This document shows, in pieces, positions 7,221 to 58,001 of a stretch of 64,000 bases of DNA. The first letter of the stretch is position 1, and every line of letters starts with the position of its first letter. Below the pieces are notes generated by a model. That model saw only the letters and a list, made by a program, of their open reading frames with translations. It did not search any database and was not told the origin of the DNA. The DNA lies in IMG/VR virus record IMGVR_UViG_3300028654_000384, positions 124,001 through 188,000 of that record. One strand, given 5' to 3'. Position numbers and translations under genes: made by a program.

Positions 7221-7445
7221 GTGCAGCCCGGTGAATTGGTCGTCAAGCGCGTCAGGTGGAGCGTGGACGCCGAGTGCATGGGGTTTGTCGTCGCCCACGC
7301 CGCCGGTGATGTCGATGAGTGTTTGGTGATGTGGACGATGGGTGACCAACGCATCATGTTCAAGTGGCACCTGACCGACGCGTTGATGGCGGTCGACACG
7401 TCTAACGTTGCCGAAGTGAGGGGCAGATGCGACCTCGGTTCTTGA
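7221..7445 (+). CDS. KOW/SH3-like PGxL family protein
   Basis: QPGELV..GFVVA..CLVMW. Confidence 0.6.
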   Translation: MQPGELVVKRVRWSVDAECMGFVVAHAAGDVDECLVMWTMGDQRIMFKWHLTDALMAVDTSNVAEVRGRCDLGS

Positions 7446-7651
7446 CGGGTGACCTGATCTTGCATACCGGGTGGGATCGTCTGTCGTGGTGTCGGACGAT
7501 TGCCATGGTCGTCTCCGTGATGCCGGCTAATGACGTGCCTGACGCACAGATCAGAGGCATTGAAGCACAACCATGGATCTACTACGTGCTCGACGTCAAT
7601 ACCAACATCATCAACGGTCCACTAACGTCATCGGAGATGGACAGTGCTTAG
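7427..7651 (+). CDS. KOW/SH3-like PGxL family protein
   Basis: LTGDLI..AMVVSV..YYVL. Confidence 0.55.
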   Translation: MRPRFLTGDLILHTGWDRLSWCRTIAMVVSVMPANDVPDAQIRGIEAQPWIYYVLDVNTNIINGPLTSSEMDSA

Positions 7652-8003
7652 GTCGTGGCGACCCGGTGATTTAGCGATCGTCTGTGGCAATAGCCTCATC
7701 AGTCGACTCAACAGCAATGTGGCACAGTGGACATTCGGTCACAAGCTTGTCATCATCGTCGGCGGAGTCAACAGGTGGGTTAGTTCTTCTGACGATGAAG
7801 ATGTCGTGCAATGTTACATCGTCATGGTGTCTCACACAGACTACGGTGCACACGCTCCAGGTGGCAATCTCAATCCCATCACATGGCCCCACGTCGTGCC
7901 GCTAGTCAGTGGCTTGTACTCGGTACCGAGCGACAGGCTGCTCGATCTGACGGAGTTCAGTGAACCAGGCCGCCTGTTTGGCACCCAGAGGCTGCGAGAT
8001 TAA
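7644..8003 (+). CDS. KOW/SH3-like PGxL family protein
   Basis: RPGDLAIV..LVIIVG..YIVMV. Confidence 0.6.
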   Translation: MLRSWRPGDLAIVCGNSLISRLNSNVAQWTFGHKLVIIVGGVNRWVSSSDDEDVVQCYIVMVSHTDYGAHAPGGNLNPITWPHVVPLVSGLYSVPSDRLLDLTEFSEPGRLFGTQRLRD

Positions 8004-8009
8004 TTGTCG

Positions 8010-8273
8010 TCACCTAGGTGTAAGCAACTGCCAGTTATACTTGAGGTTTTCAAGTGACGACGAGAAGATGAAGATCTTGTCGAGCGCTAAGACGTCGAAC
8101 CTCACGCTCTCCCGTACACGACCGATAAACATGACGGCCATCACCAGCCCGGTGAATCCTGGGTAAATAACATCACCGTGGTCGCCCCTGTACCAGTGCG
8201 ATTCCCACGCCCGCATCGGATGTAGGGCGGCAATTAGGTCACCCGGTTGCAGCGTCAAAGGCCGCGGCGTCAC
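8010..8273 (-). CDS. KOW/SH3-like PGxL family protein
   Basis: QPGDLIA..TGLVMAV..FDVL. Confidence 0.65.
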   Translation of the reverse strand: MTPRPLTLQPGDLIAALHPMRAWESHWYRGDHGDVIYPGFTGLVMAVMFIGRVRESVRFDVLALDKIFIFSSSLENLKYNWQLLTPR

Positions 8274-8800
8274 TTGAGTCTGAAAGATCGCAACACATCA
8301 CCGCACACCACACCGGCGCCCGATCGTTCCGAATCGGCCTTGCAGGCGATGACATAACCCAGGTGCGTTGACGCTTGGCCAATGCCCACGATGCCGAAAC
8401 CCAACTTGGCGTCGGTGACAATGATCGTCATCGATGCCGGCGAGCCCCCGACGTCAATCATGTTACGTTTGATGAAGGAGGGTGTGCCTTGCACCAGTCG
8501 CGGCGCCTGCATCGCCACGTTCCCAGCGAACTGTTCAGGCGTCTCCTCTTCATCCATGCCCCGCGCGGTGACGATGACACCCGTGGGTGAACGGGTGCTC
8601 GGCCCGGGAGCGTGCGCACGGGTGGCCTCAGCATTGTCTTGATCGATGATCCAACCATCGGGGAACGTCATTGACCAATTTGCGTGATTGATGACGACGC
8701 GTGCAGGCGTAGCAGCGGCGCTTGCCGGGCTAGAGTGTTGGTGCGTACAGCAGGCAGTCGTGACGACCAGTAATGCTAGAGCACTCAATCGCTTCATCAT
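8270..8800 (-). CDS. lipoprotein, PsbP/DcrB-like surface domain
   Basis: Lipobox-like TTAC after hydrophobic helix; WSMTFPDGW start of an alpha/beta sandwich. Confidence 0.6.
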   Translation of the reverse strand: MMKRLSALALLVVTTACCTHQHSSPASAAATPARVVINHANWSMTFPDGWIIDQDNAEATRAHAPGPSTRSPTGVIVTARGMDEEETPEQFAGNVAMQAPRLVQGTPSFIKRNMIDVGGSPASMTIIVTDAKLGFGIVGIGQASTHLGYVIACKADSERSGAGVVCGDVLRSFRLK

Positions 8801-9120
8801 GGCTCAACACTACATGGGGGGCGGACAATTGTCCAAAGGTTGTCGTATCCCTCCCAATCGAGCTCAAGTATCGTCATCTCACACCAACCATGACCTGACA
8901 TCAACCCATTGACTAATTGCCCGATCGATGAACGCTCGTAGTAGGCGAGAGTGGCCTGTTCTTCGCTGGAGATGATGAACGCATGGTTGCCACTGACGTG
9001 GAAGACGATCATGTCCCCCGGGCGCACGGGCAACACCTTGCGGGCGAGGCCGTCCATCGCTCGGCGCAGTTCAGGGCGCACGGTGGAAGACTCGCCAGCG
9101 TTTTCCGCGCTCATCATCAA
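8797..9120 (-). CDS. KOW/SH3-like PGxL family protein
   Basis: RPGDMIVF..AFIIS. Confidence 0.55.
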   Translation of the reverse strand: MMMSAENAGESSTVRPELRRAMDGLARKVLPVRPGDMIVFHVSGNHAFIISSEEQATLAYYERSSIGQLVNGLMSGHGWCEMTILELDWEGYDNLWTIVRPPCSVEP

Positions 9121-9313
9121 ACAACACTAGCACCTTGACATATTCACCGATGATGACTGTCACCACGTTGTAGCGACCCTCAACACGTTTTTCAACATTG
9201 ACAATGAAGGCCAATATGGGCTTGCCGGTCGTCGCGCGGAAATCAATGAGCAAGTGGCCCGGTAACAATGGAAGATCAGCGGCCATCTTTCGTAAGTAAT
9301 CGTTCGAGTTCAC
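9071..9313 (-). CDS. KOW/SH3-like PGxL family protein
   Basis: LPGHLLI..AFIVNV..VTVII. Confidence 0.55.
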   Translation of the reverse strand: MNSNDYLRKMAADLPLLPGHLLIDFRATTGKPILAFIVNVEKRVEGRYNVVTVIIGEYVKVLVLFDDERGKRWRVFHRAP

Positions 9314-9675
9314 AGCGCAATGTCACGTTGATCGGGGGCCGTGGCCGTGGGTGCCGGGGGCGTGATTGTGGTCGCGGTCGGGGCGGCGTACGGTGCACAC
9401 TTGCACACGACGTTGTTGTCGATGATGTGGAGCGAAGTGTGGGGCGGACACGTGGCCACGTCGTGCTGTTCAGGTTCAACATTGACAATGACGTCAACGC
9501 ACGCATTGCGCTCGTCCAGCCTTTCAACGCCGCGTCCCAACACGAACGTCAACCCAATTATAACCGTGGCGATGAAGGAAACGATCAGGCCATCAGTGAC
9601 AGGTTTGAAAGACTTTGCCCACATGTTCAAGCTCCTCTTACAGCACGCACCATGAACGATTGCGATCATTGTCAT
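9310..9675 (-). CDS. membrane-anchored Cys-containing protein with Pro/Thr tail
   Basis: TM helix then C..C..CKC; true start probably downstream. Confidence 0.55.
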   Translation of the reverse strand: MTMIAIVHGACCKRSLNMWAKSFKPVTDGLIVSFIATVIIGLTFVLGRGVERLDERNACVDVIVNVEPEQHDVATCPPHTSLHIIDNNVVCKCAPYAAPTATTITPPAPTATAPDQRDIAL

Positions 9676-9865
9676 CGAGGAGTAATTCGTGCACTCGTTC
9701 CTCGAACAATGCTAACACTGACCAAGTCATCTCATTGATGAAACCTCGACGTTGTTGATGTTGACACGAGATGATCAAACCCACGGTATACATCGGTGTC
9801 AACCATGGATCACGGTTTAGATCAATGCGCCTAGTCACGGTCTTAAGTAGTGAACCGGGCTGCAT
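9638..9865 (-). CDS. KOW/SH3-like PGxL family protein
   Basis: MQPGSLL..VGLIIS..WSVLALF. Confidence 0.6.
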   Translation of the reverse strand: MQPGSLLKTVTRRIDLNRDPWLTPMYTVGLIISCQHQQRRGFINEMTWSVLALFEERVHELLLDDNDRNRSWCVL

Positions 9866-9901
9866 CTGATCAGAGTGTAATCCACGTAGGAAGGATGTAC
9901 T

Positions 9902-10270
9902 GTGATTGAGATGGAATTGATGTCTCAAGAGCGTACTTCAATCGTGCTTGAGGGCCATGTGACCCTGTCACGACCCAACTACACGACGCCGTTGTCGGCG
10001 ATTGAATTGGCTCACATCAAGGCGGGCGAACCGCTGGCGATTGCCGCGGGGCGTAATCCCACCACCAACGGCATCACCTTCTTGCTGGCCTCAGGTGAAC
10101 TCAGGGAGTTGGCTAATGCCAGCAGCCTAGGAATTCCTGATGGCGCTGTCAGGCCCACCGATCACGGTCAAACGCTCGCTGTAGACTGGTACGCCGGCGA
10201 CTTTGAGATTGACGTGGGCTATGCAATTGATCATAGTGCCATCATTGGCTTAGATTCTCAAGAGAGGTAA
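9902..10270 (+). CDS. hypothetical protein
   Basis: 122 aa ORF with phage-like codon usage. Confidence 0.65.
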   Translation: MIEMELMSQERTSIVLEGHVTLSRPNYTTPLSAIELAHIKAGEPLAIAAGRNPTTNGITFLLASGELRELANASSLGIPDGAVRPTDHGQTLAVDWYAGDFEIDVGYAIDHSAIIGLDSQER

Positions 10271-16160: not shown

Positions 16161-16432
16161 GTGAGCGTCCACTATGCTCACGTCGATGCCCGCGACATCA
16201 GGCCAGGGGACCTGCTGTTCGACCTGCAGGCACAACACCTACCAAGCATCGGTAGTATGCTGACGACGCGCGTTGCACAGTGCCTGTTGCTGGTGATTGG
16301 CAACCTGGAGTTAGAGGCACCAGACGTTCGCAAGGGTGCTACTTCTTGGTCGTCAACAATAGCGGGCAGGTGACCGAGAGGTTCTGCTATTTTGGCTCGG
16401 GCAATGACGTGGTGAGAGTTGATGATCGATGA
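16161..16432 (+). pseudogene. PGxL family member with apparent frameshift (or sequencing error)
   Basis: RPGDLLF..CLLLVIG in one frame; family-type C-terminus GCYFLVVNNSGQV.. in another frame after the GGG run at 16334-16336. Confidence 0.45.
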
Positions 16433-17378: not shown

Positions 17379-17645
17379 TCACTCGGTGACGATCCGCCTG
17401 ATCCAACCCAACGAACCCGTGTGCCAGATCACCGTGGGCCCGGGTCCCAGCAACTGATACATGTACCAGCCACCCACCGTTGCCATCTTATAGTCACGCG
17501 CCAACAGCAACCACGGTACCGCCCGATCGATGCCGGCGTTCGGATCTATGGAGAAGATGGTCCACCCATCGCCGTTCGGATTGGCGATAAAGAAGAAGAA
17601 TGTCCCAACCTCGATGTTAGCGGGGGAAAATTCACGATCACGCAT
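17379..17645 (-). CDS. KOW/SH3-like family protein (divergent)
   Basis: EVGTFF..WLLLA..YQLLG..VIW. Confidence 0.5.
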   Translation of the reverse strand: MRDREFSPANIEVGTFFFFIANPNGDGWTIFSIDPNAGIDRAVPWLLLARDYKMATVGGWYMYQLLGPGPTVIWHTGSLGWIRRIVTE

Positions 17646-17865
17646 TGAATGCCATCATTGTTGACTTGCACTCATAGTCGGTGTAGTGACGTAGTTTACA
17701 CTCGTCAGTGAAGACCGTGACGGTAGCCTTTGCGAGGTTGCCCACAGATCTGTCAGTGAACGGCTCAACACCGATGACCAGCGCGGTGATCCACTCGATG
17801 TTGGAGGCAGAGCTCTGCAAGCTCTGCAACATGTCGCCCGGTTTCAGGTTCTTTGCCGACCTCAC
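17638..17865 (-). CDS. KOW/SH3-like PGxL family protein
   Basis: KPGDML..ALVIGV..VTVF. Confidence 0.65.
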   Translation of the reverse strand: MRSAKNLKPGDMLQSLQSSASNIEWITALVIGVEPFTDRSVGNLAKATVTVFTDECKLRHYTDYECKSTMMAFNA

Positions 17866-18074
17866 TTGACAACCTCACACCATGTGCCGATATAGGCGTA
17901 ACTATATGCCTCAACCTTGCCATTGTCAACCACAATGGTCACCCTATCATCAAAACTATTGACGTCAGGGTCATCGGGCACCGCAATGACGAAGGCGAAG
18001 TGCCATGGCACCAAGTCGCCTTTACCACGGTAGTGTATCCGACGCAGGAGATTACCTGGCACGGGCAGCATCAT
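17862..18074 (-). CDS. KOW/SH3-like PGxL family protein
   Basis: VPGNLL..AFVIAV..VTIVVDNGKV. Confidence 0.6.
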   Translation of the reverse strand: MMLPVPGNLLRRIHYRGKGDLVPWHFAFVIAVPDDPDVNSFDDRVTIVVDNGKVEAYSYAYIGTWCEVVK

Positions 18075-18397
18075 GCATGCCTGTCATTGATGACACGTAA
18101 TTCACAGTCGCTCGACGACACCCAAATTGGTCGGCCCTTCCACAGGACGAGGTGTGCAGTGATAGCTCCGAGGTTGAACTTGATCTTCGGGGGCGCCAAC
18201 TGCTGGCTGGCGATGTAGAGGCAATAGGTACCCGCGGGGATGACTCCCACCATGATGGCATCTACCTCAGTTCTTGTCTTCGCGCGATCGAACAACTCTG
18301 GCACACGCTTGGCTTTGATCGAGAACGAATCACGGAGTTGCCAGAGCTGTACTAGGTTGCCCGTCTTGAGATCGGTCACTGTCCGACTCCGCACCAC
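18071..18397 (-). CDS. KOW/SH3-like PGxL family protein
   Basis: KTGNLVQLW..YCLYIA..HLVLWKGRPIWV. Confidence 0.65.
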   Translation of the reverse strand: MVRSRTVTDLKTGNLVQLWQLRDSFSIKAKRVPELFDRAKTRTEVDAIMVGVIPAGTYCLYIASQQLAPPKIKFNLGAITAHLVLWKGRPIWVSSSDCELRVINDRHA

Positions 18398-18750: not shown

Positions 18751-19098
18751 TCACCGCGTGTAAGGGTGTGTAAGGGTGTGTAAGGGTGTGTAAGGGTGTG
18801 TAAGGCCGAGGAAGTCTGCGGGCACTTGAAGCGCCGCGGCGAGCTTGCGTCTAAACACGTTCACATCATCATCGTCGAACAGCATGGGCATGCGTGACCA
18901 CAGCACCTTCACCTGCTCGACACCATCGTCGTCATTGACCACGGCACTGACCACGACACCCAAGGAAGTATGGCGAAAGCTAACGTCACAGACGAGGTCA
19001 CCGGGACGGGGTTGCCACGCCAGCCGCTCGAACTCGTTTACCTGTTGTCGACGATCGACGTGAACTATCAACGTCGTCCACGTGGTTGCCAGCTTCAC
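18751..19098 (-). CDS. KOW/SH3-like PGxL family protein; C-terminus encoded by the 10-mer repeat
   Basis: RPGDLVC..LGVVVS..VKVLWS. Confidence 0.55.
   Translation of the reverse strand: MKLATTWTTLIVHVDRRQQVNEFERLAWQPRPGDLVCDVSFRHTSLGVVVSAVVNDDDGVEQVKVLWSRMPMLFDDDDVNVFRRKLAAALQVPADFLGLTHPYTPLHTLTHPYTR
18758..18805. repeat. perfect tandem repeat (GTGTAAGGGT) x4.8
   Basis: Directly visible; 10-bp period. Confidence 0.95.
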
Positions 19099-19421: not shown

Positions 19422-19625
19422 TTACGACCACAACACCCAGACATAATACGACGGGTATCGTGCGCGGGAAGGTGGGCGCCCAATGACGAGGCCCAAGCGC
19501 CTTGGGATCAACTCCGTGGATCGACACACCAGCGCGCCGGGTGCGATGTCACGAGCCCCTTGAAGCGCGGCGCACTTCGGCTCATGCGCCACAATCAACG
19601 CAAACTGGTTCACCTCTTCGAGCAC
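19422..19625 (-). CDS. KOW/SH3-like PGxL family protein
   Basis: APGALV..LGLVIG..YVWVLW. Confidence 0.55.
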   Translation of the reverse strand: MLEEVNQFALIVAHEPKCAALQGARDIAPGALVCRSTELIPRRLGLVIGRPPSRARYPSYYVWVLWS

Positions 19626-20374: not shown

Positions 20375-20674
20375 CTATACATCATCATCCTGTACCTGAG
20401 CAAACCGCGGTGATGAGATGACATTGGTGTATTCGGTCCGAACCCAACCCCATTTCACCTGAGCACCATGGGTGCCGATGATCCAGACCAACACCCAGTC
20501 CAAGTGCCGGTTGATGCCGATTACAAGAGCGCTGGTGCCGCCCGGCGCTCCGCCAATGTGAGCGCGCACGGCGGGCTTGGTATAAAGCAACGCGTAGCCA
20601 TTGAACACGACGACATCACCAGGTAGCGCCCGTCGCCCGTGAAAATGTAGACGGAGGCGCTTGGTGAACGTCAC
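20375..20674 (-). CDS. KOW/SH3-like PGxL family protein
   Basis: LPGDVV..SALVIGI..WVLV..WGWV. Confidence 0.7.
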   Translation of the reverse strand: MTFTKRLRLHFHGRRALPGDVVVFNGYALLYTKPAVRAHIGGAPGGTSALVIGINRHLDWVLVWIIGTHGAQVKWGWVRTEYTNVISSPRFAQVQDDDV

Positions 20675-20904
20675 GTCGGCACCAATATGATGCCGCGTTC
20701 AACGATCCAACCCAGCGTATTGCCCCACAACGCGTAGACAAAACCGTCTCGGTGAGCGATGACGACGCCCATGACGCTTGGCTCAACGTGGCCCACACAG
20801 TCGTTAACGCCCACATCGACCGACGCCCACACGGCCACCTTGAGAGAGGTCCAACGTGCGTCGAGTTGCACGAAGTCGCCGGGTAACCATTCGTGATCTA
20901 TCAT
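20671..20904 (-). CDS. KOW/SH3-like PGxL family protein
   Basis: LPGDFV..GVVIA..VYALWGNTLGWI. Confidence 0.75.
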   Translation of the reverse strand: MIDHEWLPGDFVQLDARWTSLKVAVWASVDVGVNDCVGHVEPSVMGVVIAHRDGFVYALWGNTLGWIVERGIILVPT

Positions 20905-21140
20905 ACGGGCGCCACGACGGTGTTGTCAACCCATGCCATGATGGCCAACTCCGACCAAAAGACACAGACGAGGAACTGGTCACATTGGCCGATGACGAGG
21001 CCCAACGCCCCCGCGGTGGGACGACCTACACGATCGTGATTGGTGACATCGTTGGAGGCCCACAGTGAAAAGATGTTGTTGCGTGGCAATGGCACCACCT
21101 TGACAAGGACACCGGGTAGTAACAGTGACCCGTTGTTCAC
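20901..21140 (-). CDS. KOW/SH3-like PGxL family protein
   Basis: LPGVLV..GLVIG..VCVFW..AWV. Confidence 0.75.
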   Translation of the reverse strand: MNNGSLLLPGVLVKVVPLPRNNIFSLWASNDVTNHDRVGRPTAGALGLVIGQCDQFLVCVFWSELAIMAWVDNTVVAPV

Positions 21141-21403
21141 GGCAAGAACCTCAACTCATCATTGAACAGCCAACCCACCTGGTCATCAACGAGGCACAGC
21201 GAATAGCATGTGCCCTTATTTTTCGGTGACTCTATGGCAATGACCAGCGCTACCATGTGATTTTTAGCCGCGATGCCCCGACCGTTCCACCATGCTTGGC
21301 GTTCATCGAGGTTCTCATAGAGCGCAGCACCCGGTCGCACGCCATATAACTTCCCCGGCCTTGTGGTGAGGCGTGAGTAATGTGACCTAGTCATCTTCAC
21401 CAT
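21137..21403 (-). CDS. KOW/SH3-like PGxL family protein
   Basis: RPGKLY..ALVIA..LCLVDDQVGWL. Confidence 0.75.
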   Translation of the reverse strand: MVKMTRSHYSRLTTRPGKLYGVRPGAALYENLDERQAWWNGRGIAAKNHMVALVIAIESPKNKGTCYSLCLVDDQVGWLFNDELRFLP

Positions 21404-21407: not shown

Positions 21408-21653
21408 TCACACCTTACGCAGGTAGCCGTCCGACACGTAGCCCAACACCGACGGCATTGACCACAACACGTAGGTGTAGTCCCGCCGACGATTGATGAC
21501 GAGGCCTAGGCCACCCGGCATCACCACGCCTAGGCGACTGCGCACGACGAGGAGCTCGCCGGCGCTAACGGAGCTCCATACCGAAACGGGCTCATCACCG
21601 CGAACCAACACGATGTCACCGGGTGCGGGTGGCCTGTCGATGTAACTCATCAC
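21408..21653 (-). CDS. KOW/SH3-like PGxL family protein
   Basis: APGDIV..GLVIN..TYVLW..LGYV. Confidence 0.75.
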   Translation of the reverse strand: MMSYIDRPPAPGDIVLVRGDEPVSVWSSVSAGELLVVRSRLGVVMPGGLGLVINRRRDYTYVLWSMPSVLGYVSDGYLRKV

Positions 21654-21681: not shown

Positions 21682-21951
21682 TTACTTGACCCTCACCAAG
21701 AACTTGACCAGCGTCCAGCCCTTTTTCATTGATGCACTGTCAAAGACAAACGCCCATGCAACGTCTTTTTCATGTCGCCCGTCGACATCGGTGATGGTTC
21801 GCTCTGCCAACAATAATCCGAACTTGAATGTCCCGGTCGCTGACACCATGCGAGGTACAAACACCGACGGCAATGGTTGATCCCACGTACCATGACCACC
21901 CACGTGTACGCTCCTCACCAGGTCACCCGTACGTAGTAACTTGCGGCCCAT
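21682..21951 (-). CDS. KOW/SH3-like family protein
   Basis: RTGDLV..GLLLA..WAFV..KGW; TGATG coupling. Confidence 0.65.
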   Translation of the reverse strand: MGRKLLRTGDLVRSVHVGGHGTWDQPLPSVFVPRMVSATGTFKFGLLLAERTITDVDGRHEKDVAWAFVFDSASMKKGWTLVKFLVRVK

Positions 21952-22289
21952 CAGTGCCTTCCGACGACGCGAAGGGCCGAGCCCCAGACCCATTTAATCC
22001 GCGGCTTACTGGTGTTCACTAGCACCAAGGTGGGATGCGAGGTGTAATCGGAATAAAGGCTCGGTACGGCGATCACCGCGAGGACGAGGGCATGCTTCTC
22101 GACGAACATTAAGGCACCTTCAATAAGCCCCGTCAAGAGGGCACGCGCTGGCACTTCCGTACCAAACACCGTGACTTGTCGACCCGGGATGGGATTCAGC
22201 CTCACATCGTCCCACAGCGCCACGGGGTGTTTACACGCGACGATGTCACCGGGCCTAATGTCGATCACGTGTTTGATGACATCGATCAC
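21951..22289 (-). CDS. KOW/SH3-like PGxL family protein
   Basis: RPGDIV..ALVLAV..TLVLV..KWVW. Confidence 0.75.
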   Translation of the reverse strand: MIDVIKHVIDIRPGDIVACKHPVALWDDVRLNPIPGRQVTVFGTEVPARALLTGLIEGALMFVEKHALVLAVIAVPSLYSDYTSHPTLVLVNTSKPRIKWVWGSALRVVGRH

Positions 22290-22561
22290 GGCGCGGCCTC
22301 GATGCTCTCGAGCAGCACCCAGCCCAGCTTGCCGTCGTCATACAACACGTAGACGACGGTGTCACCACCCTTCTTGTGCATGGTGATGACCAGCGCCTTG
22401 GCATTGAGGCGACCCTGCAACCCACCGGCGAACAGGTTGCTGTCGTCACCACCGTTGATGTGACTAAAGATGATGCGCGGCATGTAGGGCACGGGCACCA
22501 CCAGGTCGCCGGGCTTGATGCAGGCATCAGGCGACCATTGGTCAGCTTTGGCGTCGATCAT
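22286..22561 (-). CDS. KOW/SH3-like PGxL family protein
   Basis: KPGDLV..ALVIT..VYVLYDDGKLGWV. Confidence 0.75.
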   Translation of the reverse strand: MIDAKADQWSPDACIKPGDLVVPVPYMPRIIFSHINGGDDSNLFAGGLQGRLNAKALVITMHKKGGDTVVYVLYDDGKLGWVLLESIEAAP

Positions 22562-22944
22562 GGCACTTTCTTCAGGTCAGCTGCCCACATATAGCCAACC
22601 TCGCCACCGAGGAGTACGAGCACCAAGCCCAGATTGGCTCCATTCCATGGAGCACCTAACCCGCATCGGGAAATGACGAAGATCAACCTCCCGTCGATTG
22701 GTACGGACCTCACACAATCACCCAAGATGAATGCATCTTCGCCTAGGTCCTGGTTGGTGTCGGGATCACGTAGTCGGACACGTTCAATGCTCGGGCTAAA
22801 GGCTCCAGGTTGGCCGCGCGACCCCATCGTCACCCAATCACCGTGATCAAATTGAGTGCGGAGGGTGTACATCGGTTCTTCACGATTGTAAGGCCCATGA
22901 CGTGGGCCTTTGCTACGGTACATGACGACTTGGGACGGCATCAC
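22558..22944 (-). CDS. KOW/SH3-like family protein (longer member)
   Basis: LIFVIS..VLVLLGGEVGYM. Confidence 0.65.
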   Translation of the reverse strand: MMPSQVVMYRSKGPRHGPYNREEPMYTLRTQFDHGDWVTMGSRGQPGAFSPSIERVRLRDPDTNQDLGEDAFILGDCVRSVPIDGRLIFVISRCGLGAPWNGANLGLVLVLLGGEVGYMWAADLKKVP

Positions 22945-25003: not shown

Positions 25004-25189
25004 CCAGGAGTTGACGAGCGAACGTTCGAAGTGAGTCAGCATCCACGTAGCATCCAGCACCTTGACCAAGTTGGCAGGGTCTTTCACCCCGTATGCTTGC
25101 CTCTTGACGCCATTGGGGAGCGTGAACTCGACCCGGTTGGTCGTGGGATCAATGACGGTAAAAGTTGTCGTTGCTGCTCTCTTCACCAT
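24998..25189 (-). CDS. hypothetical protein (leaderless)
   Basis: ATG 6 nt after -10. Confidence 0.7.
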   Translation of the reverse strand: MVKRAATTTFTVIDPTTNRVEFTLPNGVKRQAYGVKDPANLVKVLDATWMLTHFERSLVNSWV

Positions 25190-25195
25190 GATCTA

Positions 25196-25225
25196 ACTCT
25201 ACCACGGTTCACCAGGGACTTACAC
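25196..25225 (-). promoter_or_regulatory. phage promoter GTGTAA-18-TAGAGT (leaderless)
   Basis: Consensus match; near-identical to the 31595 copy. Confidence 0.85.
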
Positions 25226-25232
25226 CGTCCAC

Positions 25233-25255
25233 GAATTATACTCGAGGTGTAATTC
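25233..25255. promoter_or_regulatory. 23-bp palindromic operator GAATTATAC-N5-GTGTAATTC
   Basis: 7 bp upstream of the -35; one of five copies. Confidence 0.75.
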
Positions 25256-26262: not shown

Positions 26263-26453
26263 GCACCGGCGATAGGTTGAGACAACTGGCGATGGCGTGG
26301 CGCAAACAAGTGGCTAGCGATGCGTTGAGTCACGTGGGTAGCAATAGCGAGATCCGCCGGGCGAGGGGCGAACGCCTGCTGATGTGCGCAGGCGAACTTG
26401 AGGCGCTGGCGAGAGAAGTCGACAAGGCAGTCACGTCAACCGATTGCTCCTGA
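26259..26453 (+). CDS. hypothetical helical protein
   Basis: ATGA overlap. Confidence 0.55.
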   Translation: MSTGDRLRQLAMAWRKQVASDALSHVGSNSEIRRARGERLLMCAGELEALAREVDKAVTSTDCS

Positions 26454-26706
26454 TGTAGCAGGTGCGGCCTACACACACGATCTGGCAATACGAGTGGTGT
26501 ACCCCCGACATGGTGATGACTGCCAACACTAGCGCTAGTTCACCATTGCACCACACGCTGCGCGCCACGACTCCCGCGCCGTATCCTACAGTATAGAACG
26601 GAAACGGGCGGGTGTAGCCCCAGCCCTTGGCCACGTACAGTTCCCCGGGTTTGCGGATCAAGTCAACGTCAGGGGTATTGAGTTCAGTGGGCATGCACGT
26701 CCTCAA
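26431..26706 (-). CDS. KOW/SH3-like PGxL family protein
   Basis: KPGELY..LALVLAV..QIVCVGRTCYI. Confidence 0.7.
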   Translation of the reverse strand: MRTCMPTELNTPDVDLIRKPGELYVAKGWGYTRPFPFYTVGYGAGVVARSVWCNGELALVLAVITMSGVHHSYCQIVCVGRTCYIRSNRLT

Positions 26707-26956
26707 AGAATTGGTGATAGCCCCAACCCAGCTTGCCTGTCGGTGTCAACACCAACACCTCGAGCGTGCCATTGGAGTTCACCGCGACGGCGACAGCTAA
26801 CACCACTTTGAGTGGCTCTATGCGATCGATGATTGGGTTGGCACTGAGTGCAGAGATGCCTATGCGCGCGCTGACGTTGACATAAGAGTCCTGATCAGGC
26901 AACCTGCTGCGTATGCGAACCAGCATGCCTGGGAGAATGCGGCCATGCGGCGCCAT
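26684..26956 (-). CDS. KOW/SH3-like PGxL family protein
   Basis: LPGMLV..VVLAV..VLVLTPTGKLGW. Confidence 0.75.
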   Translation of the reverse strand: MAPHGRILPGMLVRIRSRLPDQDSYVNVSARIGISALSANPIIDRIEPLKVVLAVAVAVNSNGTLEVLVLTPTGKLGWGYHQFFEDVHAH

Positions 26957-27165
26957 CACCTCACCAACCACTTCAACACCCCGATGTACCATGCTTGGCG
27001 AAAGTCGCAGGTCCAGTACCAGTAGGGGCTGGTGCACCCGCCGCCCAAGTATTCTCGACCGTGACCCATAATTTTGCCGCGCCCGTCCTTGACCCATGAC
27101 TCATTGCTGGTGAGGGTGCGGTCACATGCCGGGCACGTCAATTCTGTGTTGATGAAGTACGTCAT
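26956..27165 (-). CDS. small CPxC zinc-ribbon-like protein
   Basis: TCPACD; ATGA overlap. Confidence 0.55.
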   Translation of the reverse strand: MTYFINTELTCPACDRTLTSNESWVKDGRGKIMGHGREYLGGGCTSPYWYWTCDFRQAWYIGVLKWLVR

Positions 27166-31208: not shown

Positions 31209-31238
31209 TGTCTCGGCATCTCCGTCGGTTGAGATCTA

Positions 31239-31268
31239 ACTCTACCAGGTTCGTGGTGGAACTTGCAC
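31239..31268 (-). promoter_or_regulatory. phage promoter GTGCAA-18-TAGAGT
   Basis: Consensus match; leader with GGAG before RadA-like gene. Confidence 0.8.
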
Positions 31269-31270
31269 TA

Positions 31271-36516: not shown

Positions 36517-36523
36517 GGTGCAC

Positions 36524-38711: not shown

Positions 38712-38894
38712 CTACGGCACCTCGATGACGTGTGACTGGGCGATGAGGTTGCCGTCGCTGTCGAGGGTGACGGTGTGGACCCACTGGCCGTCGCAGTACC
38801 AGCAGCACTCGAGCTCGATGAGGGGCTCGGTGGGAATGTTGTTGATGAGCCGGGTGTGCCAGAGGTGGTCACCGGGGCAGAAAGTGGGGTCCAT
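38712..38894 (-). CDS. hypothetical protein with CxxC (leaderless)
   Basis: CCWYC; ATG 6 nt after -10. Confidence 0.7.
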   Translation of the reverse strand: MDPTFCPGDHLWHTRLINNIPTEPLIELECCWYCDGQWVHTVTLDSDGNLIAQSHVIEVP

Positions 38895-38900
38895 GATCTA

Positions 38901-38930
38901 ATCCTACCAGGAACGGGTGGTCTCTTGCAC
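38901..38930 (-). promoter_or_regulatory. phage promoter GTGCAA-18-TAGGAT (leaderless)
   Basis: Consensus match. Confidence 0.85.
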
Positions 38931-38937
38931 TGTCCAT

Positions 38938-45422: not shown

Positions 45423-45671
45423 ATGAGCAGTCAGCAGCTTGAATACCTGCCCGGTCGCCTCGCCCGCGTGGCCTTTGAGTACTATCACTTGTGGACGATC
45501 GACATGAACACCGACCTCGCCACCCGCTCTCGCGTCGGCGATGGTGCTGTCGTGCGCTGCGGCATGGTGGGCCTCATCGTATCGCCGATCGGCGGTGCGG
45601 GCTACGTCGTGGCACTGTTCGGTGATAAGTGGGGGTGGATCCACCACCGCGCGTTGGCAGCGGTGCAGTGA
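45423..45671 (+). CDS. KOW/SH3-like PGxL family protein
   Basis: YLPGRL..LW..VGLIVS..VALFGDKWGWIHH. Confidence 0.75.
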   Translation: MSSQQLEYLPGRLARVAFEYYHLWTIDMNTDLATRSRVGDGAVVRCGMVGLIVSPIGGAGYVVALFGDKWGWIHHRALAAVQ

Positions 45672-45901
45672 TGAATTACTTGCCCGGTCGCCTCGTCGTT
45701 GCTAGCTACAACCACTATGGCCTGTGGCTGACGGCGAAGGCGGTCGGTCTCGTGGCGGTGGTGCAACGCGGTGAAGTGGGCCTCATCGTGTCGGCGACGC
45801 GTGGGGCGGGGGGTTATGAACTGGTGCTGTTCGGCGACAAGGTGGGTTGGATACACCATGATGCATACGTGGTTTACACCGCCACCACCACACCCGTGTG
45901 A
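45668..45901 (+). CDS. KOW/SH3-like PGxL family protein (recent duplicate of previous)
   Basis: YLPGRL..LW..VGLIVS..LVLFGDKVGWIHH. Confidence 0.75.
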   Translation: MMNYLPGRLVVASYNHYGLWLTAKAVGLVAVVQRGEVGLIVSATRGAGGYELVLFGDKVGWIHHDAYVVYTATTTPV

Positions 45902-47106: not shown

Positions 47107-47216
47107 AAACCCCTGATCCCAAGCCGTGAGGTGGGCTGTAAGTGACCCCTCCCTACATGGCAAAGGCACGTGCAACCCACCTCACGGCTTGGGATCCTTT
47201 CTACAGTGTTGCTAAC

Positions 47217-47495
47217 ATGAAGCCCGGAGACATGATCGAATGGCGCTACGAGTCGAGCGATAAGCCCATCGCCCGTGATGAATATGTCTGGTCATCGGTG
47301 ATGAACCGTTGGTTGCCCATCGGCGGTGTACACCTGTTGATCAGTCGTGACAATGACGAGCTGACGTGGCTCTACACAAGTGCCGGTGCCACGCGCATCG
47401 GCAAGGCACTGGTTAGTGACAGCAACCTGGGTCGCTTAGATAAACGAGTGTTCGATGGGTGCTACCCCGTCGTAGTGCAAGGTCACCTCACTTAG
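47217..47495 (+). CDS. KOW/SH3-like PGxL family protein, WxY/IGGV subfamily
   Basis: MKPGDMIEWRY..YVWS..IGGVHLL..LTWL. Confidence 0.75.
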   Translation: MKPGDMIEWRYESSDKPIARDEYVWSSVMNRWLPIGGVHLLISRDNDELTWLYTSAGATRIGKALVSDSNLGRLDKRVFDGCYPVVVQGHLT

Positions 47496-48798: not shown

Positions 48799-48820
48799 TG
48801 AAAGTAACGAGAGAGGGAAT

Positions 48821-49909: not shown

Positions 49910-49919
49910 AGGACATCAG

Positions 49920-56303: not shown

Positions 56304-56304
56304 A

Positions 56305-56334
56305 GTGTAAGTTAACACCCAACAGTGATAGGAT
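56305..56334 (+). promoter_or_regulatory. phage promoter GTGTAA-18-TAGGAT (leaderless)
   Basis: CTGATC then ATG 56341. Confidence 0.85.
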
Positions 56335-56340
56335 CTGATC

Positions 56341-56961
56341 ATGGCATACGACGAAGCATTCTTCACCGCCTACCGCGCCTACCTGCAGGAGACCCTCGTC
56401 AGGAAGAACCACAGGCGAGCCTTCGATCACCTCATCGGCCTGATGACCGACGGGCCCATCGATTACGCTCCTCGCGTCGTCGACCTGGGTTGTGGTACCG
56501 GTGAGTTCTACGAGCGGGGTTATCACCGCGACTACGTCGGCATCGATCTCAATCCACGCATTGCCTGGCAGGGCGCCAAGGTGATCAAGGCCTCCAGCGT
56601 CGACGTCGATGCATGGAGCAAGCAGCTACCCTTCGAGCCCAACACCTTCGTCAGCGTGTTCTCGATCGAGCCAATGCGGGGCGCGTACTATCGCTACGAG
56701 CTGTACGATCGCCTGTTCAGGGAGTTGCCGTCGCTGCAGTTCGGCATGTCGGCAGGTTTCTACTATGACAATGAGCGTATGGGCGACCGCAAGGTCAGCG
56801 AGGCGGGTGGCATCGTCAGCTGGCAGACCAACCAACTGTTGGGCAAGGACGGTGATCGCAGCCTGTACAATGAAGAGTGGCTGACGATGCGGACGCCGTC
56901 GCAGATGTTCGGGCCCGACGTCGTCGAGGTCTGGAAGTTCTTCAGTCGAGTGCAGCCGTGA
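56341..56961 (+). CDS. class I SAM-dependent methyltransferase
   Basis: VVDLGCGTGE, YVGIDLN motifs. Confidence 0.85.
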   Translation: MAYDEAFFTAYRAYLQETLVRKNHRRAFDHLIGLMTDGPIDYAPRVVDLGCGTGEFYERGYHRDYVGIDLNPRIAWQGAKVIKASSVDVDAWSKQLPFEPNTFVSVFSIEPMRGAYYRYELYDRLFRELPSLQFGMSAGFYYDNERMGDRKVSEAGGIVSWQTNQLLGKDGDRSLYNEEWLTMRTPSQMFGPDVVEVWKFFSRVQP

Positions 56962-57392
56962 AGCAGTGGTACTTTCCGCTGGCCCGCGTCGAGCAGGATG
57001 ACAACTACGGTTGTGCCATTGCGTCGGTGGCGACGGTCTGCGGCGTCACCTATGGTCGAGCGCGAGCCGAGTTCTTTCCCAAGCGGCGCGACTTCGACGA
57101 CAACCGAACGCTGTGCGTGCGCGGTCACCACATGCTGCGCGTCATTCACAAGTTGGGCTTCAAGGCGCACTTCCACCATGGGACCTACGGGCACTTCAGG
57201 TGCCCGGTGCTGGTGCCCTTCGCGTGGTTCCCGCCCGATCCCAATTGGATCCACTGCGTCGTCTGGGATCCCTTCGGAGAAGAGTACATTGATCCCGGGC
57301 CCGATCACAACGACCCGGCGCCCAACAACAGGTACACCAAGCTGTGGCGCAAGAGCAACTTTCGCGTCATCGTCGTCACCGGCAAGAGGTAG
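56958..57392 (+). CDS. C39-like papain-fold cysteine peptidase
   Basis: Q....GCAIA (Q/C), HCVVWD, YIDPG. Confidence 0.7.
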   Translation: MKQWYFPLARVEQDDNYGCAIASVATVCGVTYGRARAEFFPKRRDFDDNRTLCVRGHHMLRVIHKLGFKAHFHHGTYGHFRCPVLVPFAWFPPDPNWIHCVVWDPFGEEYIDPGPDHNDPAPNNRYTKLWRKSNFRVIVVTGKR

Positions 57393-57397
57393 GTCAC

Positions 57398-57679
57398 ATG
57401 GTCACCAAGAGCATCGCCAAGCGCCTCGACGCAATGCAGAAGCACAAGCAACCCAAGGTGCCCGTCTTCCCGCCGTCGGCACAGACGACCTATGACAAGG
57501 CGCTGTGCATCAGCACCGAAGGTGGGCCCATGGCGTGGGTTGCCTACGGCATCATGAGCCGCATGAGCGTGCTGTATGCAGCTAACACGGATGCCTTCGA
57601 CAATGAGAAGATGATGGCTGCCATGTTGACCATGGTGAACACGCTGTCGGCGTACGTCGATGCCACAACCTCAACATGA
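57398..57679 (+). CDS. hypothetical protein
   Basis: GAGG RBS. Confidence 0.65.
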   Translation: MVTKSIAKRLDAMQKHKQPKVPVFPPSAQTTYDKALCISTEGGPMAWVAYGIMSRMSVLYAANTDAFDNEKMMAAMLTMVNTLSAYVDATTST

Positions 57680-58001
57680 GCTGAAGGGCGGCGGGACACT
57701 ACGTCCTGGCGACTTGATCGAGTGGGTCTATACCGTCGGCAGGGACCTCGTCTATGCTGACGACATGATGTGGTCACCAGAGATGCAGTCGTCGGTGGCG
57801 ATCGGCGGCGTCCACCTGTTGGTCAGTCTCCGCGTCGGCCTTGGACTTGCATGGTGGGAGATGACGTGGTTGCCACTGGGCGACGGCCCGGATCGTATGG
57901 GATTGTGTAGCATCGCCATTGTTCATACGTCTCCTGCACGACCCAGGCGAATGACCGAAGGTGCTCGGGGCCATGGCCAGCCGCGCCGGCGCTACCTATG
58001 A
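57660..58001 (+). CDS. KOW/SH3-like PGxL family protein, WxY/IGGV subfamily
   Basis: RPGDLIEWVY..MWS..IGGVHLL..MTWL; start uncertain. Confidence 0.65.
   Translation: MPQPQHELKGGGTLRPGDLIEWVYTVGRDLVYADDMMWSPEMQSSVAIGGVHLLVSLRVGLGLAWWEMTWLPLGDGPDRMGLCSIAIVHTSPARPRRMTEGARGHGQPRRRYL

What the first reader, a model, noticed from the sequence alone, without database searches (positions are those of the whole stretch)
7221..58001. About 59 divergent paralogs of a tiny KOW/SH3-like protein family
Seen: about 59 ORFs of 65-130 aa share the pattern x-P-G-x-L-(V/I) ... variable loop often holding L-W ... (C/G/A)-L-(V/I)-(I/V) ... Y/F-V-x-V-L ... G-W-(V/I/L). They are translationally coupled head-to-tail and are mostly highly divergent in sequence. 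Established: the NusG C-terminal KOW barrel begins FEPGEMVRV, and two members begin FEPGDLI and FEPGTLF. Inference: a conserved five-strand barrel with a hypervariable loop, i.e. an expanded binder repertoire (anti-defence proteins, or transcription/translation-factor mimics). It accounts for roughly a quarter of the window.
Basis: partly seen in the sequence, partly recalled or inferred. Interest (0 to 1): 0.8.

Follow-up and report, generated by a model that had tools for sequence, protein, structure and literature searches.

The report
Phage arrays of tiny SH3-like proteins
A huge uncultured soil phage carries about 40 to 55 very different copies of one tiny gene, each encoding a single bacterial-type SH3 barrel; the barrel core is kept while the surface varies freely, which suggests a set of binding proteins, but their targets and function are untested.

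Summary
The family is real. An HMM iterated on the window unites 37-38 ORFs. An HMM built only from non-window homologues finds 40. Reversed and shuffled controls give 0. With hhalign the count is 37 secure, 43 with probable members, 46 with a 3-member sister family and 55 with motif-only candidates.

Members are 66-118 aa and average 20% identity. They lie head to tail, mostly with 4-nt or 1-nt overlaps, in three leftward operons plus one rightward pair.

AlphaFold gives a confident six-strand barrel (pLDDT 87). Its best structural matches are bacterial SH3 (SH3b/SH3_3) domains of NlpC/P60 peptidases and endolysins, then eukaryotic SH3. No KOW protein is in the top 50. No Pfam, NCBIfam or PHROG model covers the family.

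More than 100 further cluster representatives exist, in similar arrays on other contigs (34 copies in 20 kb of one). Several of these contigs are large, uncultured-phage records.

Only core residues are conserved. The loops carry the insertions, pI runs from 4.4 to 11.3, and no member has a signal peptide.

Best reading: a cytoplasmic set of stand-alone SH3b binding modules. The fold is well supported; the function is inferred.

The parts
8010..8273 (-). secure family member, 87 aa, isolated copy
   Evidence: HMM E 1.3e-6; hhalign 96.8%; public gene call P0006
20375..20674 (-). secure member, 99 aa (array 1)
   Evidence: E 1.9e-6; 96.6%
20671..20904 (-). secure member, 77 aa (array 1)
   Evidence: E 1.8e-10; 97.3%
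20901..21140 (-). secure member, 79 aa (array 1)
   Evidence: E 4.5e-10; 97.1%
21137..21403 (-). secure member, 88 aa (array 1)
   Evidence: E 1.2e-12; 97.2%
21408..21650 (-). secure member, 80 aa (array 1); has 47-55% identical orthologues in other phage contigs
   Evidence: E 2.1e-13; 98.1%
21682..21993 (-). probable member, 103 aa
   Evidence: hhalign 92.5% over 74 columns
21951..22289 (-). member with a long internal insertion, 112 aa
   Evidence: N-terminal block E 1.4e-3; hhalign 95.9% over 17 columns; all motifs visible by eye
22286..22561 (-). secure member, 91 aa (array 1)
   Evidence: E 1.9e-9; 98.0%
22558..22941 (-). probable member, 127 aa, barrel in the C-terminal half
   Evidence: hhalign 86.8%
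26431..26694 (-). secure member, 87 aa (array 2)
   Evidence: E 1.2e-8; 96.7%
26684..26971 (-). secure member, 90-95 aa (array 2)
   Evidence: E 2.6e-10; 97.8%
27162..27410 (-). secure member, 82 aa (array 2)
   Evidence: E 1.3e-13; 98.4%
27759..28001 (-). secure member, 80 aa (array 2)
   Evidence: E 5.7e-10; 97.2%
27998..28243 (-). secure member, 81 aa (array 2); 48-54% orthologue in L130
   Evidence: E 2e-12; 97.2%
28240..28497 (-). secure member, 85 aa (array 2)
   Evidence: E 4.7e-11; 98.3%
28502..28783 (-). secure member, 93 aa, starts MKFEPGDLI; start reset to the ATG that overlaps the upstream stop by 4 nt
   Evidence: E 1.7e-5; 96.5%
28780..29085 (-). secure member, 101 aa, long loop insertion (array 2)
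   Evidence: E 2.3e-8; 96.7%
29082..29354 (-). secure member, 90 aa (array 2)
   Evidence: E 3.8e-12; 96.6%
29408..29683 (-). secure member, 91 aa (array 2)
   Evidence: E 9.2e-11; 96.8%
29680..29895 (-). secure member, 71 aa (array 2)
   Evidence: E 6.5e-11; 96.5%
29892..30167 (-). secure member, 71-91 aa (array 2)
   Evidence: E 9e-9; 96.3%
30164..30430 (-). sister family B member, 88 aa (MKPGDLIEWVY...IGGVHLLIS...LTWL)
   Evidence: A3/A4 alignments; AF2 pLDDT 88, 7-strand barrel; hhalign to A1 63% over the N-terminal half
33345..33617 (+). possible member, 90 aa, on the opposite strand at the array edge
   Evidence: HMM E 0.004; hhalign 46%
33587..33847 (-). secure member, 86 aa (array 3)
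   Evidence: E 3.9e-14; 98.4%
33844..34065 (-). secure member, 73 aa (array 3)
   Evidence: E 2.6e-10; 97.6%
34062..34298 (-). secure member, 78 aa (array 3)
   Evidence: E 2.2e-11; 98.2%
34295..34510 (-). secure member, 71 aa (array 3)
   Evidence: E 6e-7; 95.3%
34510..34755 (-). secure member, 81 aa (array 3)
   Evidence: E 1e-11; 97.3%
34799..34999 (-). secure member, 66 aa (array 3)
   Evidence: E 7.9e-9; 96.8%
34996..35223 (-). secure member, 75 aa (array 3)
   Evidence: E 1.1e-11; 97.6%
35220..35429 (-). secure member, 69 aa (array 3)
   Evidence: E 2.3e-9; 96.5%; start taken from the near-identical public variant P0089
35426..35641 (-). secure member, 71 aa (array 3)
   Evidence: E 2.7e-13; 98.1%
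35638..35850 (-). secure member, 70 aa (array 3)
   Evidence: E 6.3e-9; 96.6%
35847..36068 (-). secure member, 73 aa (array 3)
   Evidence: E 9.2e-9; 96.2%
36053..36271 (-). secure member, 72 aa, starts MSGFEPGTLFF; the copy modelled with AF2
   Evidence: E 6.1e-10; 97.9%; AF2 pLDDT 87; Foldseek SH3b/SH3; Atlas SH3_3 neighbours
36271..36558 (-). secure member, 95 aa (array 3)
   Evidence: E 3.1e-6; 96.7%
36760..37014 (-). secure member, 84 aa (array 3)
   Evidence: E 6.1e-13; 97.1%; public call P0026
36999..37148 (-). 49-aa ORF matching only the last two strands; likely a truncated remnant
   Evidence: HMM E 1.4e-3 on profile positions 53-71; hhalign 52%
37261..37617 (-). secure member, 118 aa with an N-terminal extension (array 3)
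   Evidence: E 9e-12; 96.8%; public call P0002
45408..45671 (+). secure member, 87 aa; with the next gene the closest paralogue pair (57% identity)
   Evidence: E 5.5e-13; 97.7%
45671..45901 (+). secure member, 76 aa
   Evidence: E 7.1e-15; 98.1%
47142..47495 (+). sister family B member, 117 aa
   Evidence: hhalign 75.5% to the main family
57660..58001 (+). sister family B member, 113 aa
   Evidence: hhalign 55%
7221..7445 (+). probable member, 74 aa
   Evidence: HMM E 1e-3 to 1.4e-2; hhalign 84%
18071..18379 (-). possible member, 102 aa
   Evidence: HMM E 0.011-0.016; hhalign 63%
7644..8003 (+). motif-only candidate, 119 aa (PGDL plus a hydrophobic beta-4-like block)
   Evidence: hhalign 40%; group profile A5 against A1 72% over the N-terminal half only
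9071..9313 (-). motif-only candidate, 80 aa
   Evidence: HMM E 0.41; in A5
9638..9928 (-). motif-only candidate, 96 aa
   Evidence: hhalign 53% over 13 columns
16161..16373 (+). motif-only candidate, 70 aa
   Evidence: hhalign 43%
17379..18074 (-). three coupled motif-only candidates (17379-17645, 17638-17865, 17862-18074)
   Evidence: HMM E 0.4-2.3; hhalign up to 35%; in A5
18751..19098 (-). motif-only candidate, 115 aa
   Evidence: hhalign 26%
19422..19625 (-). motif-only candidate, 67 aa
   Evidence: HMM E 0.049
38892..38935 (-). promoter-like motif (GTGCAAGT, 17-18 nt, TAGGATTAGATC, ATG) at the head of the leftward operon that holds array 3; the end coordinate is approximate
31234..31277 (-). 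the same promoter-like motif, here with a short 5'UTR, ahead of ATPase 30417-31208, then 30164-30430 and array 2
25187..25234 (-). the same promoter-like motif at the head of the leftward operon that runs into array 1, the Met aminopeptidase and the 17.4-19.6 kb candidates

Best explanation
The window comes from a huge uncultured rhizosphere phage; public contigs carrying its proteins reach 361 kb. It holds at least 37, and up to about 55, paralogous genes for stand-alone proteins of 66-118 aa. Each protein is a single bacterial-type SH3 (SH3b, SH3_3-like) beta-barrel.

Shown:
- The genes sit head to tail with overlapping stop and start codons.
- They form three leftward polycistronic blocks. 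Each block lies downstream of the same phage promoter-like motif. There is also one rightward pair.
- Only the barrel core is conserved: PGxLV, LW, G-LVI, YVLVL, GW. The beta1-beta2 tip, the RT-like loop and the beta4-beta5 loop vary freely in length and sequence.
- Net charge ranges from strongly acidic to strongly basic.
- No member has a signal peptide or an attached catalytic domain.

Inferred mechanism: the proteins are made together in the infected cytoplasm. Each acts as a small rigid binding module whose own surface binds a different host or phage partner, either a protein or a peptide. Together they would form a set of binders for host take-over or counter-defence. The set would have been built by old tandem duplications, fast divergence, and gene gain and loss within the arrays.

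Confidence differs by step. The fold and family assignment is about 0.9. The binder-repertoire function is about 0.35-0.4. Nothing here shows that the genes are expressed, what they bind, or when they act.
For: Family and statistics. Three HMMs give 37-41 hits against 0 in reversed or shuffled controls.

Fold:
- AF2 pLDDT 87, pTM 0.74.
- Top Foldseek PDB matches are the SH3b domains of NlpC/P60 proteins 6biq, 2hbw and 2evr (TM 0.67-0.71). Next come Shank and Abl SH3 and the phiSM101 endolysin.
- All ten ESM Atlas structural neighbours carry PF08239 SH3_3.
- BFVD neighbours are endolysin SH3 domains, plus small uncharacterised proteins of the Pseudomonas phages Psa21, Noxifer and Phabio.

Sequence link to SH3_3: the profile hits multi-repeat SH3_3/GW proteins, aligned in register.

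Conservation pattern: information is high only at core positions. Insertions reach 21, 13 and 12 residues in three loops. pI runs from 4.4 to 11.3. There are no N-terminal hydrophobic leaders.

Coupling: overlaps of 4 nt or 1 nt in most adjacent pairs.

Operons: the promoter-like motif occurs 13-14 times against 0.3-1.4 expected. No excess of sigma-70 sites or terminators lies inside the arrays.

Copies are kept individually: orthologues at 35-55% identity, partly in the same order, occur in other contigs.

The trait is shared: 34 members in 20 kb of L012, 14 in L013, and 8 in 12 kb of the 278-kb IMG/VR contig of L070.

Precedent for a stand-alone SH3 protein acting through protein binding in a jumbo phage: PhiKZ049 is described as an SH3 domain protein that interacts with the phage DNA polymerase (PMC12571901).
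Against: - There is no expression, interaction or phenotype data. No RNA run was listed.
- No binding partner is known and no conserved surface site is seen.
- The long loop is variable even among orthologues, for example in the 21408-21650 orthogroup (sequences). It may simply be unconstrained.
- Characterised SH3b domains mostly bind peptidoglycan rather than cytoplasmic proteins.
- The phage is nearly clonal across samples, with 2 SNPs in 5.9 kb. Selection on the loops could not be measured.
- The structural matches have weak Foldseek E-values (0.014 or higher), as is usual for 70-residue barrels.
Confidence: 0.4

Rival explanations
1. Free cell-wall-binding modules. Like the SH3b domains of endolysins, and like the stand-alone SH3 genes found beside lysis cassettes, they would bind peptidoglycan stem peptides or cross-bridges. 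They would act at lysis or on neighbouring cells, with the diversity covering many wall chemotypes.
For: The closest structural matches are wall-binding SH3b domains of NlpC/P60 enzymes and endolysins. A stand-alone SH3 gene is a widespread part of the Drexlerviridae lysis module (PMC13164509).
Against: - No member has a signal peptide or membrane anchor.
- No endolysin, holin or spanin was recognised next to any array.
- Forty or more copies is far beyond what one host wall would need.
- No Pfam DUF7244 or SH3_3 hit reaches threshold.
Confidence: 0.12
2. Nucleic-acid or ribosome-binding small barrels of the KOW, Tudor, Sm or Sso7d type. They would mimic or modulate transcription or translation factors.
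For: - Small SH3-like barrels often bind RNA or DNA.
- The arrays sit among translation and folding genes: IF-1, Met aminopeptidase and GroEL.
- The sister family B model weakly resembles the uL2 SH3-like domain, Rpp29 and the integrase C-terminal domain, with TM up to 0.46.
Against: - No KOW or Sm protein is among the top 50 matches of the main family.
- No KOW Pfam hit appears.
- pI spans 4.4-11.3, with 13 acidic and 12 basic members among 37, unlike uniformly basic nucleic-acid binders.
- No conserved basic or aromatic surface motif is seen.
Confidence: 0.1
3. Packaged or injected internal proteins, or minor virion accessory proteins. The diversity would reflect anti-restriction functions delivered with the DNA, by analogy with the T4 internal proteins.
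For: Jumbo phages package many paralogous proteins (from general knowledge). The small size and polymorphism fit such a locus.
Against: - No structural genes were recognised in or beside the arrays.
- The conserved N-terminus is beta-strand 1 of the barrel, not a cleavable targeting peptide.
Confidence: 0.1
4. Largely dispensable duplicates: a tolerant fold that spreads by tandem duplication and drifts, with little specific function per copy.
For: - Divergence is star-like at 20-30% identity.
- There is one truncated remnant at 36999-37148.
- Arrays differ between relatives by gene gain and loss.
- The loops are unconstrained.
Against: - All 37 secure copies keep intact reading frames, coupled starts and the full set of core residues.
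- Individual copies have recognisable orthologues in other phages.
- The trait persists on several large uncultured-phage contigs, which argues for selection.
Confidence: 0.12
5. Not real genes: chance ORFs in GC-rich DNA.
For: The window has 523 ORFs of 50 aa or more in six frames.
Against: - Shuffled and reversed controls give 0 hits.
- Codon-usage gene calling and public gene calls agree with the coordinates.
- More than 100 homologous cluster representatives exist elsewhere.
- The AF2 model is confident.
Confidence: 0.01

Closest known systems
Bacterial SH3 domains (SH3b; Pfam SH3_3 PF08239, GW PF13457) of NlpC/P60 peptidases and phage endolysins
   Same: Same barrel fold, with TM 0.67-0.71 to 6biq, 2hbw and 2evr. 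Same C-terminal sequence signature (G-D/E-V-x-V..., then W/Y-x-V, then G-x-x-GWV), aligned in register.
   Different: These are stand-alone proteins with no catalytic partner domain, no signal peptide and no tandem repeats within one chain. They have an extra conserved PGxLV start. No member reaches the Pfam threshold. There are about 40 or more separate genes instead of one to eight domains.
Stand-alone SH3 protein (DUF7244) of the Drexlerviridae lysis module (PMC13164509)
   Same: A phage-encoded protein that is a single SH3-clan domain.
   Different: That gene is single-copy and always beside the endolysin. The genes here are about 40 or more copies, are not beside any recognisable lysis gene, and give no DUF7244 hit.
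PhiKZ049, an SH3 domain protein of jumbo phage PhiKZ reported to interact with the phage DNA polymerase (PMC12571901)
   Same: A small SH3-type protein in a jumbo phage that acts through protein-protein contact. Small proteins of the Pseudomonas phages Psa21, Noxifer and Phabio are among the structural neighbours.
   Different: It is a single gene. No sequence similarity was tested or found, and tblastn of a consensus-like member against 50,697 phage records gave nothing.
NusG/Spt5 KOW domain
   Same: A small SH3-like barrel that starts with an x-E-P-G-x-hydrophobic strand.
   Different: No KOW Pfam hit and no KOW protein in the top 50 structural matches. The glycine-rich KOW signature is absent.
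Tandem arrays of diverse immunity proteins in bacterial polymorphic-toxin loci, and repeat-protein expansions (ankyrin, BTB, F-box) in giant viruses (own knowledge, not tested)
   Same: Many divergent paralogues of one small binding fold, arranged in tandem in a genome that is in conflict with another.
   Different: A different fold. The phage copies have no adjacent toxins. This is an analogy of logic only.

Membership tests
SH3 fold superfamily, bacterial SH3b type | Small five- to six-strand barrel with the SH3 topology | tested here: met
   AF2 pLDDT 87. Foldseek probability 1.00, TM 0.57-0.71 to SH3b and SH3 structures. Atlas neighbours are all SH3_3.
Pfam SH3_3 (PF08239) | Score above the Pfam gathering threshold | tested here: not met
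   0 of 35 members pass. One reaches E 0.079.
Pfam SH3_3 (PF08239) | Profile-level sequence similarity to SH3_3 or GW repeats | tested here: inconclusive
   The family profile hits P0018, P0042 and P0035 (8, 4 and 6 SH3_3/GW repeats) at E 1.5e-9 to 1.7e-6. Each repeat adds only about 9 bits, over the C-terminal half.
Cell-wall-binding SH3b modules of lysins | Fused to, or next to, a peptidoglycan hydrolase; exported or released at lysis | tested here: not met
   No hydrolase domain in the members. No lysis genes recognised among the neighbours. No signal peptides.
Cell-wall-binding SH3b modules of lysins | Binds peptidoglycan | not testable with these tools
   Needs a binding assay.
KOW (PF00467) / NusG C-terminal domain | KOW motif recognised by the Pfam model | tested here: not met
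   No hit at E<=1 in 9 members or at E<=0.1 in 35 members.
KOW (PF00467) / NusG C-terminal domain | Closest structures are KOW barrels | tested here: not met
   None in the top 50 PDB matches.
Eukaryotic-type SH3 (PxxP binders) | ALYDY, WW and P-x-N-Y ligand-binding signature | not tested
   A structural match exists (Abl and Shank SH3, TM about 0.6). The ligand-site residues were not mapped, and the conserved positions here are core residues.
DUF7244 stand-alone SH3 of Drexlerviridae | Pfam/InterPro DUF7244 match and a position beside the lysis cassette | tested here: not met
   No Pfam hit and no lysis cassette nearby.
   The HMM unites 37-41 ORFs. Family B and about 10 motif-only ORFs reach only 26-77% hhalign probability. 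The family B model is also a small barrel but matches SH3-like structures only weakly, TM up to 0.46.

The most novel reading that the evidence does not exclude
Some huge phages may carry a hard-wired library of dozens of single-domain SH3 binders. This would be a viral counterpart of immunity-protein arrays, with each copy neutralising or hijacking a different host protein or defence effector, and with gain and loss of copies tuning host range. If so, this family, which Pfam-A, NCBIfam and PHROGs do not cover, would be a large new class of phage anti-defence or take-over proteins and a natural scaffold for engineered binders.
Probability: 0.3. Interest if true: 0.85.

Novelty: new variant of a known kind. 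Interest (0 to 1): 0.62.

Why it matters
The fold is familiar, but this use of it was not found in any resource checked. I found no curated model for the family in Pfam-A, NCBIfam or PHROGs. I found no match in 50,697 phage records for one consensus-like member. I found no paper describing dozens of stand-alone SH3 genes in a phage.

The family takes up 15-22% of this 64-kb stretch. It recurs in similar arrays on other contigs, several of them large uncultured-phage records, so it is likely to be under selection.

If the copies are specific binders, they would give direct access to many phage-host interactions at once. They would also help explain what part of the 'dark' small-gene content of huge phages is for. 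If instead they drift freely, they would be an unusually clear case of how far a fold can diverge while keeping only its core.

Tried and rejected
- Megablast of 20 kb against the phage collection found nothing.
- tblastn of a consensus-like homologue (P0021) against the phage collection found nothing.
- Pfam, PHROGs and NCBIfam scans of the members found nothing usable.
- A profile search of PDB sequences gave only chance-level hits.
A degenerate DNA pattern for MKPGDLV was used instead: 115 loci were listed, and 19 of these carry family members.
- The word-index protein search with A1 returned only the window's own proteins. The exhaustive search was needed.
- No RNA run was listed. Laying contigs of four rhizosphere samples showed a nearly clonal phage, with 2 SNPs in 5.9 kb, so no population-level test of selection was possible.
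- dN/dS between paralogues or orthologues was not attempted. Identities of 57% or less mean that synonymous sites are saturated.
- The sigma-70 and terminator scan inside the arrays was not above shuffles.
- The ESM Atlas gave nothing for sister family B.
- I considered a diversity-generating retroelement. None of the ORFs I scanned in the window matched a reverse transcriptase, and the paralogues differ at all positions, not at targeted ones.
- I considered a MazF/CcdB-type toxin fold because of the similar N-terminal motif. I rejected it on length and because the structural matches are SH3b.

Full report
**Source and setting**

The window is phage-like DNA of about 58% G+C. It has no near match among 50,697 deposited phage records. 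Its GroEL-like chaperonin gene is 100% identical to genes on two IMG/VR viral contigs of 103 and 216 kb. Public contigs carrying the window's own proteins reach 361 kb. The sequence occurs in at least 20 rhizosphere metagenome runs and is nearly clonal among them.

Recognisable neighbours are:
- a TANGO2-like protein, an AAA ATPase and GroEL;
- an IF-1 homologue at 10926-11120;
- a methionine aminopeptidase at 19610-20368, a metallophosphatase, a KaiC/RecA-like ATPase at 30417-31208, an OmpA-domain protein and an HD protein.

None of the ORFs I scanned matched a structural or lysis gene.

An HMM seeded from these and iterated on all stop-to-stop segments of the six frames converges on 38 segments. 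An HMM built only from 109 homologues that are not encoded in the window finds 40 window ORFs. Reversed or residue-shuffled translations give no hit with any of three HMMs.

A joint iteration with related contigs keeps 37 window ORFs at E<=0.001. Single-sequence hhalign against the resulting 194-sequence profile gives 37 ORFs at 95% probability or more. The best reversed control reaches 39% and the next 11%. A simple codon-usage gene caller and public gene calls (31 exact matches) place genes at the same coordinates.

The count by stringency is 37, 43, 46 and 55 ORFs, covering 14.6%, 17%, 18.5% and 22% of the window. The ORFs beyond the first 37-43 carry the PGxL start and the hydrophobic beta-4 block but cannot be joined to the family with statistical confidence.

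Three of these ORFs (30164-30430, 47142-47495, 57660-58001) form a distinct sister family with its own relatives elsewhere. It reaches 63% hhalign probability to the main family, over the N-terminal half only.

**Anatomy**

Secure members are 66-118 aa long. Mean pairwise identity is 20%. The closest pair, 45408-45671 and 45671-45901, is 57% identical. Adjacent copies (24%) are barely more alike than distant ones.

Most adjacent pairs overlap by 4 nt or 1 nt. With the corrected start at 28783, the 28502/28780 pair does so too.

The copies form three leftward arrays, at 20.4-22.9, 26.4-30.4 and 33.6-37.6 kb, plus a rightward pair at 45.4-45.9 kb and single copies at 7.2 and 8.0 kb. Inside the arrays there is no excess of sigma-70-like promoters or terminators.

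Each leftward array lies downstream of a copy of a repeated motif: GTGCAAGT, then 17-18 nt, then (G)GTAG(A/G)(G/A)TTAGATC. The short cores of this motif occur 13-14 times in the window against 0.3-1.4 expected.

**Conservation**

In the 194-sequence alignment, information is high only at P-G-(D/T)-L-V (strand 1), L-W (strand 2), G-(D/E)-(V/L)-(G/C/A)-L-V-I (strand 4), Y-V-(L/F)-V-L (strand 5), G-W-(V/I) (strand 6) and a C-terminal L-x-x-V. Insertions of up to 21, 13 and 12 residues fall at the strand 1-2 tip, after L-W, and between strands 4 and 5.

pI ranges from 4.4 to 11.3, with 13 of the 37 members acidic and 12 basic. There are no N-terminal hydrophobic leaders.

**Fold**

AlphaFold2 with the 35-member alignment models 36053-36271 as a six-strand barrel with a short helical turn (pLDDT 87, pTM 0.74).

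The best Foldseek matches in the PDB are the SH3b domains of NlpC/P60 enzymes: 6biq with TM 0.71 and rmsd 1.9 A, then 2hbw and 2evr. After these come the eukaryotic SH3 domains of Shank and Abl, an SH3 domain from Clostridium perfringens, and the phiSM101 endolysin. No KOW, NusG or ribosomal L24 entry is in the top 50.

All ten ESM Atlas structural neighbours carry PF08239 SH3_3. In the viral structure library the neighbours are SH3 domains of lysins, plus small uncharacterised proteins of the Pseudomonas phages Psa21, Noxifer and Phabio.

At sequence level no member reaches a Pfam, NCBIfam or PHROG threshold. The family profile does hit multi-repeat SH3_3/GW-domain proteins (E 1.5e-9 to 1.7e-6), aligned in register on GD-V-x-V...GWV. 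Each repeat contributes only about 9 bits.

I therefore place the family in the bacterial SH3 superfamily as a family that these libraries do not cover. It is not KOW.

The sister family B also models confidently as a small barrel (pLDDT 88). It resembles SH3-like barrels only weakly, with TM up to 0.46.

**Distribution**

The exhaustive profile search of 1.84 billion cluster representatives gives 216 hits at E<=0.001. Of the best 150, 28 are the window's own. More than 100 are other proteins of 66-118 aa with the same motifs, and none of the ten I looked up carries an informative name.

Their contigs show the same layout of coupled tiny genes:
- 34 members in 20 kb of a 55-kb contig (L012), and 14 in 20 kb of a contig from a public metagenome-derived assembly (L013).
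- 19 IMG/VR loci with members. Eight of these lie on contigs of 76-298 kb, including 8 members in 12 kb of a 278-kb contig.

A few window copies have orthologues at 47-55% identity. One short contig keeps three orthologues in the window's order but lacks the two genes between them. The copies are thus individually maintained, while the arrays gain and lose genes.

**Mechanism**

Shown: the family, its fold, its genomic organisation, its conservation pattern and its wider occurrence.

Inferred: that the proteins are cytoplasmic binding modules with different partners.

In favour of this reading:
- SH3 domains in general are binding modules.
- Only the scaffold is conserved here, while charge and loops vary widely.
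- The genes are co-oriented and coupled, so they are probably made together.
- A stand-alone SH3 protein of PhiKZ is reported to interact with the phage DNA polymerase (PMC12571901).

Against it:
- There is no evidence of expression or of any partner.
- The long loop also varies among orthologues, so it may be merely unconstrained.

Rivals:
- Peptidoglycan binding follows the usual SH3b role and the stand-alone SH3 of Drexlerviridae lysis modules (PMC13164509). It is weakened by the lack of export signals and of nearby lysis genes.
- Nucleic-acid or ribosome binding is weakened by the pI spread and the absence of KOW or Sm matches.
- Packaged virion proteins and near-neutral duplicates cannot be excluded.

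**Verdict**

The SH3-like barrel is supported and the KOW link is not. The binder-repertoire idea is plausible but untested.

This is a new variant of a known kind: a familiar fold deployed as a large, divergent, stand-alone multigene family on large uncultured-phage contigs.

Noticed in passing
window 25187-25201(-), 31234-31246(-), 31382-31396(-), 31619-31633(+), 31956-31970(+), 32330-32344(+), 32591-32605(+), 38892-38906(-), 39003-39017(+), 42394-42408(+), 58105-58119(+) and weaker copies: A repeated promoter-like motif: GTGCAAGT, 17-18 nt, TAG(G/A)(A/G)T, TAGATC, then directly the ATG of a gene. Its cores occur 13-14 times against 0.3-1.4 expected. The spacing puts the predicted transcription start on the A of the ATG, so these would be leaderless mRNAs. 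Divergent pairs sit at 31.4/31.6 kb and 38.9/39.0 kb.
   Followed up: partly
window 10926-11120 (+): A phage-encoded translation initiation factor IF-1 homologue, 64 aa, Pfam eIF-1a E 2e-23.
   Followed up: partly
window 19610-20368 (-), 5210-6871 (+): A methionine aminopeptidase (Peptidase_M24, E 6e-47) lies immediately downstream of array 1. A GroEL-like chaperonin (PHROG 5725, E 6e-146) is also present. With IF-1 these make a translation and folding gene set.
   Followed up: partly
window 47680-52618 (+): A low-GC island (44.5% against about 58%) with four large ORFs of 372, 362, 580 and 319 aa. None has a Pfam, PHROG or PADLOC match. It may be a foreign insertion.
   Followed up: partly
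window 13776-14639 (-): A GIY-YIG/HNH-type homing endonuclease gene (PHROG 314, E 2e-26) with codon usage unlike its surroundings; my gene caller split it into pieces.
   Followed up: no
window 18748-18814: A 10-nt tandem repeat (GTGTAAGGGT, about six copies) inside the 3' end of gene 18751-19098(-). It gives a repeated HPYTPLHTLT-like tail.
   Followed up: no
window 43690-44245 (+); 23860-24150 and 25341-25613 (-); 60927-61391 and 61396-61707 (+): Other small paralogue sets: three adjacent short membrane peptides that end in C-x-x-G-C-P-like tails, and two pairs of similar proteins. They were seen by eye in the translations.
   Followed up: no
L131 795-1562 and 3699-4574; ENA contig of P0143: In a related phage contig the family HMM also hits parts of two larger proteins (250 and 235 aa by the public gene calls), so the barrel may also occur fused to other domains. 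The related 31.5-kb contig of P0143 shares the KaiC-like ATPase and the metallophosphatase neighbours.
   Followed up: no
window 35220-35429 (-) versus public variant P0089: A near-identical public variant of this copy has Leu in place of the nearly invariant Trp of the G-W motif. It is either a natural variant or an assembly error.
   Followed up: no
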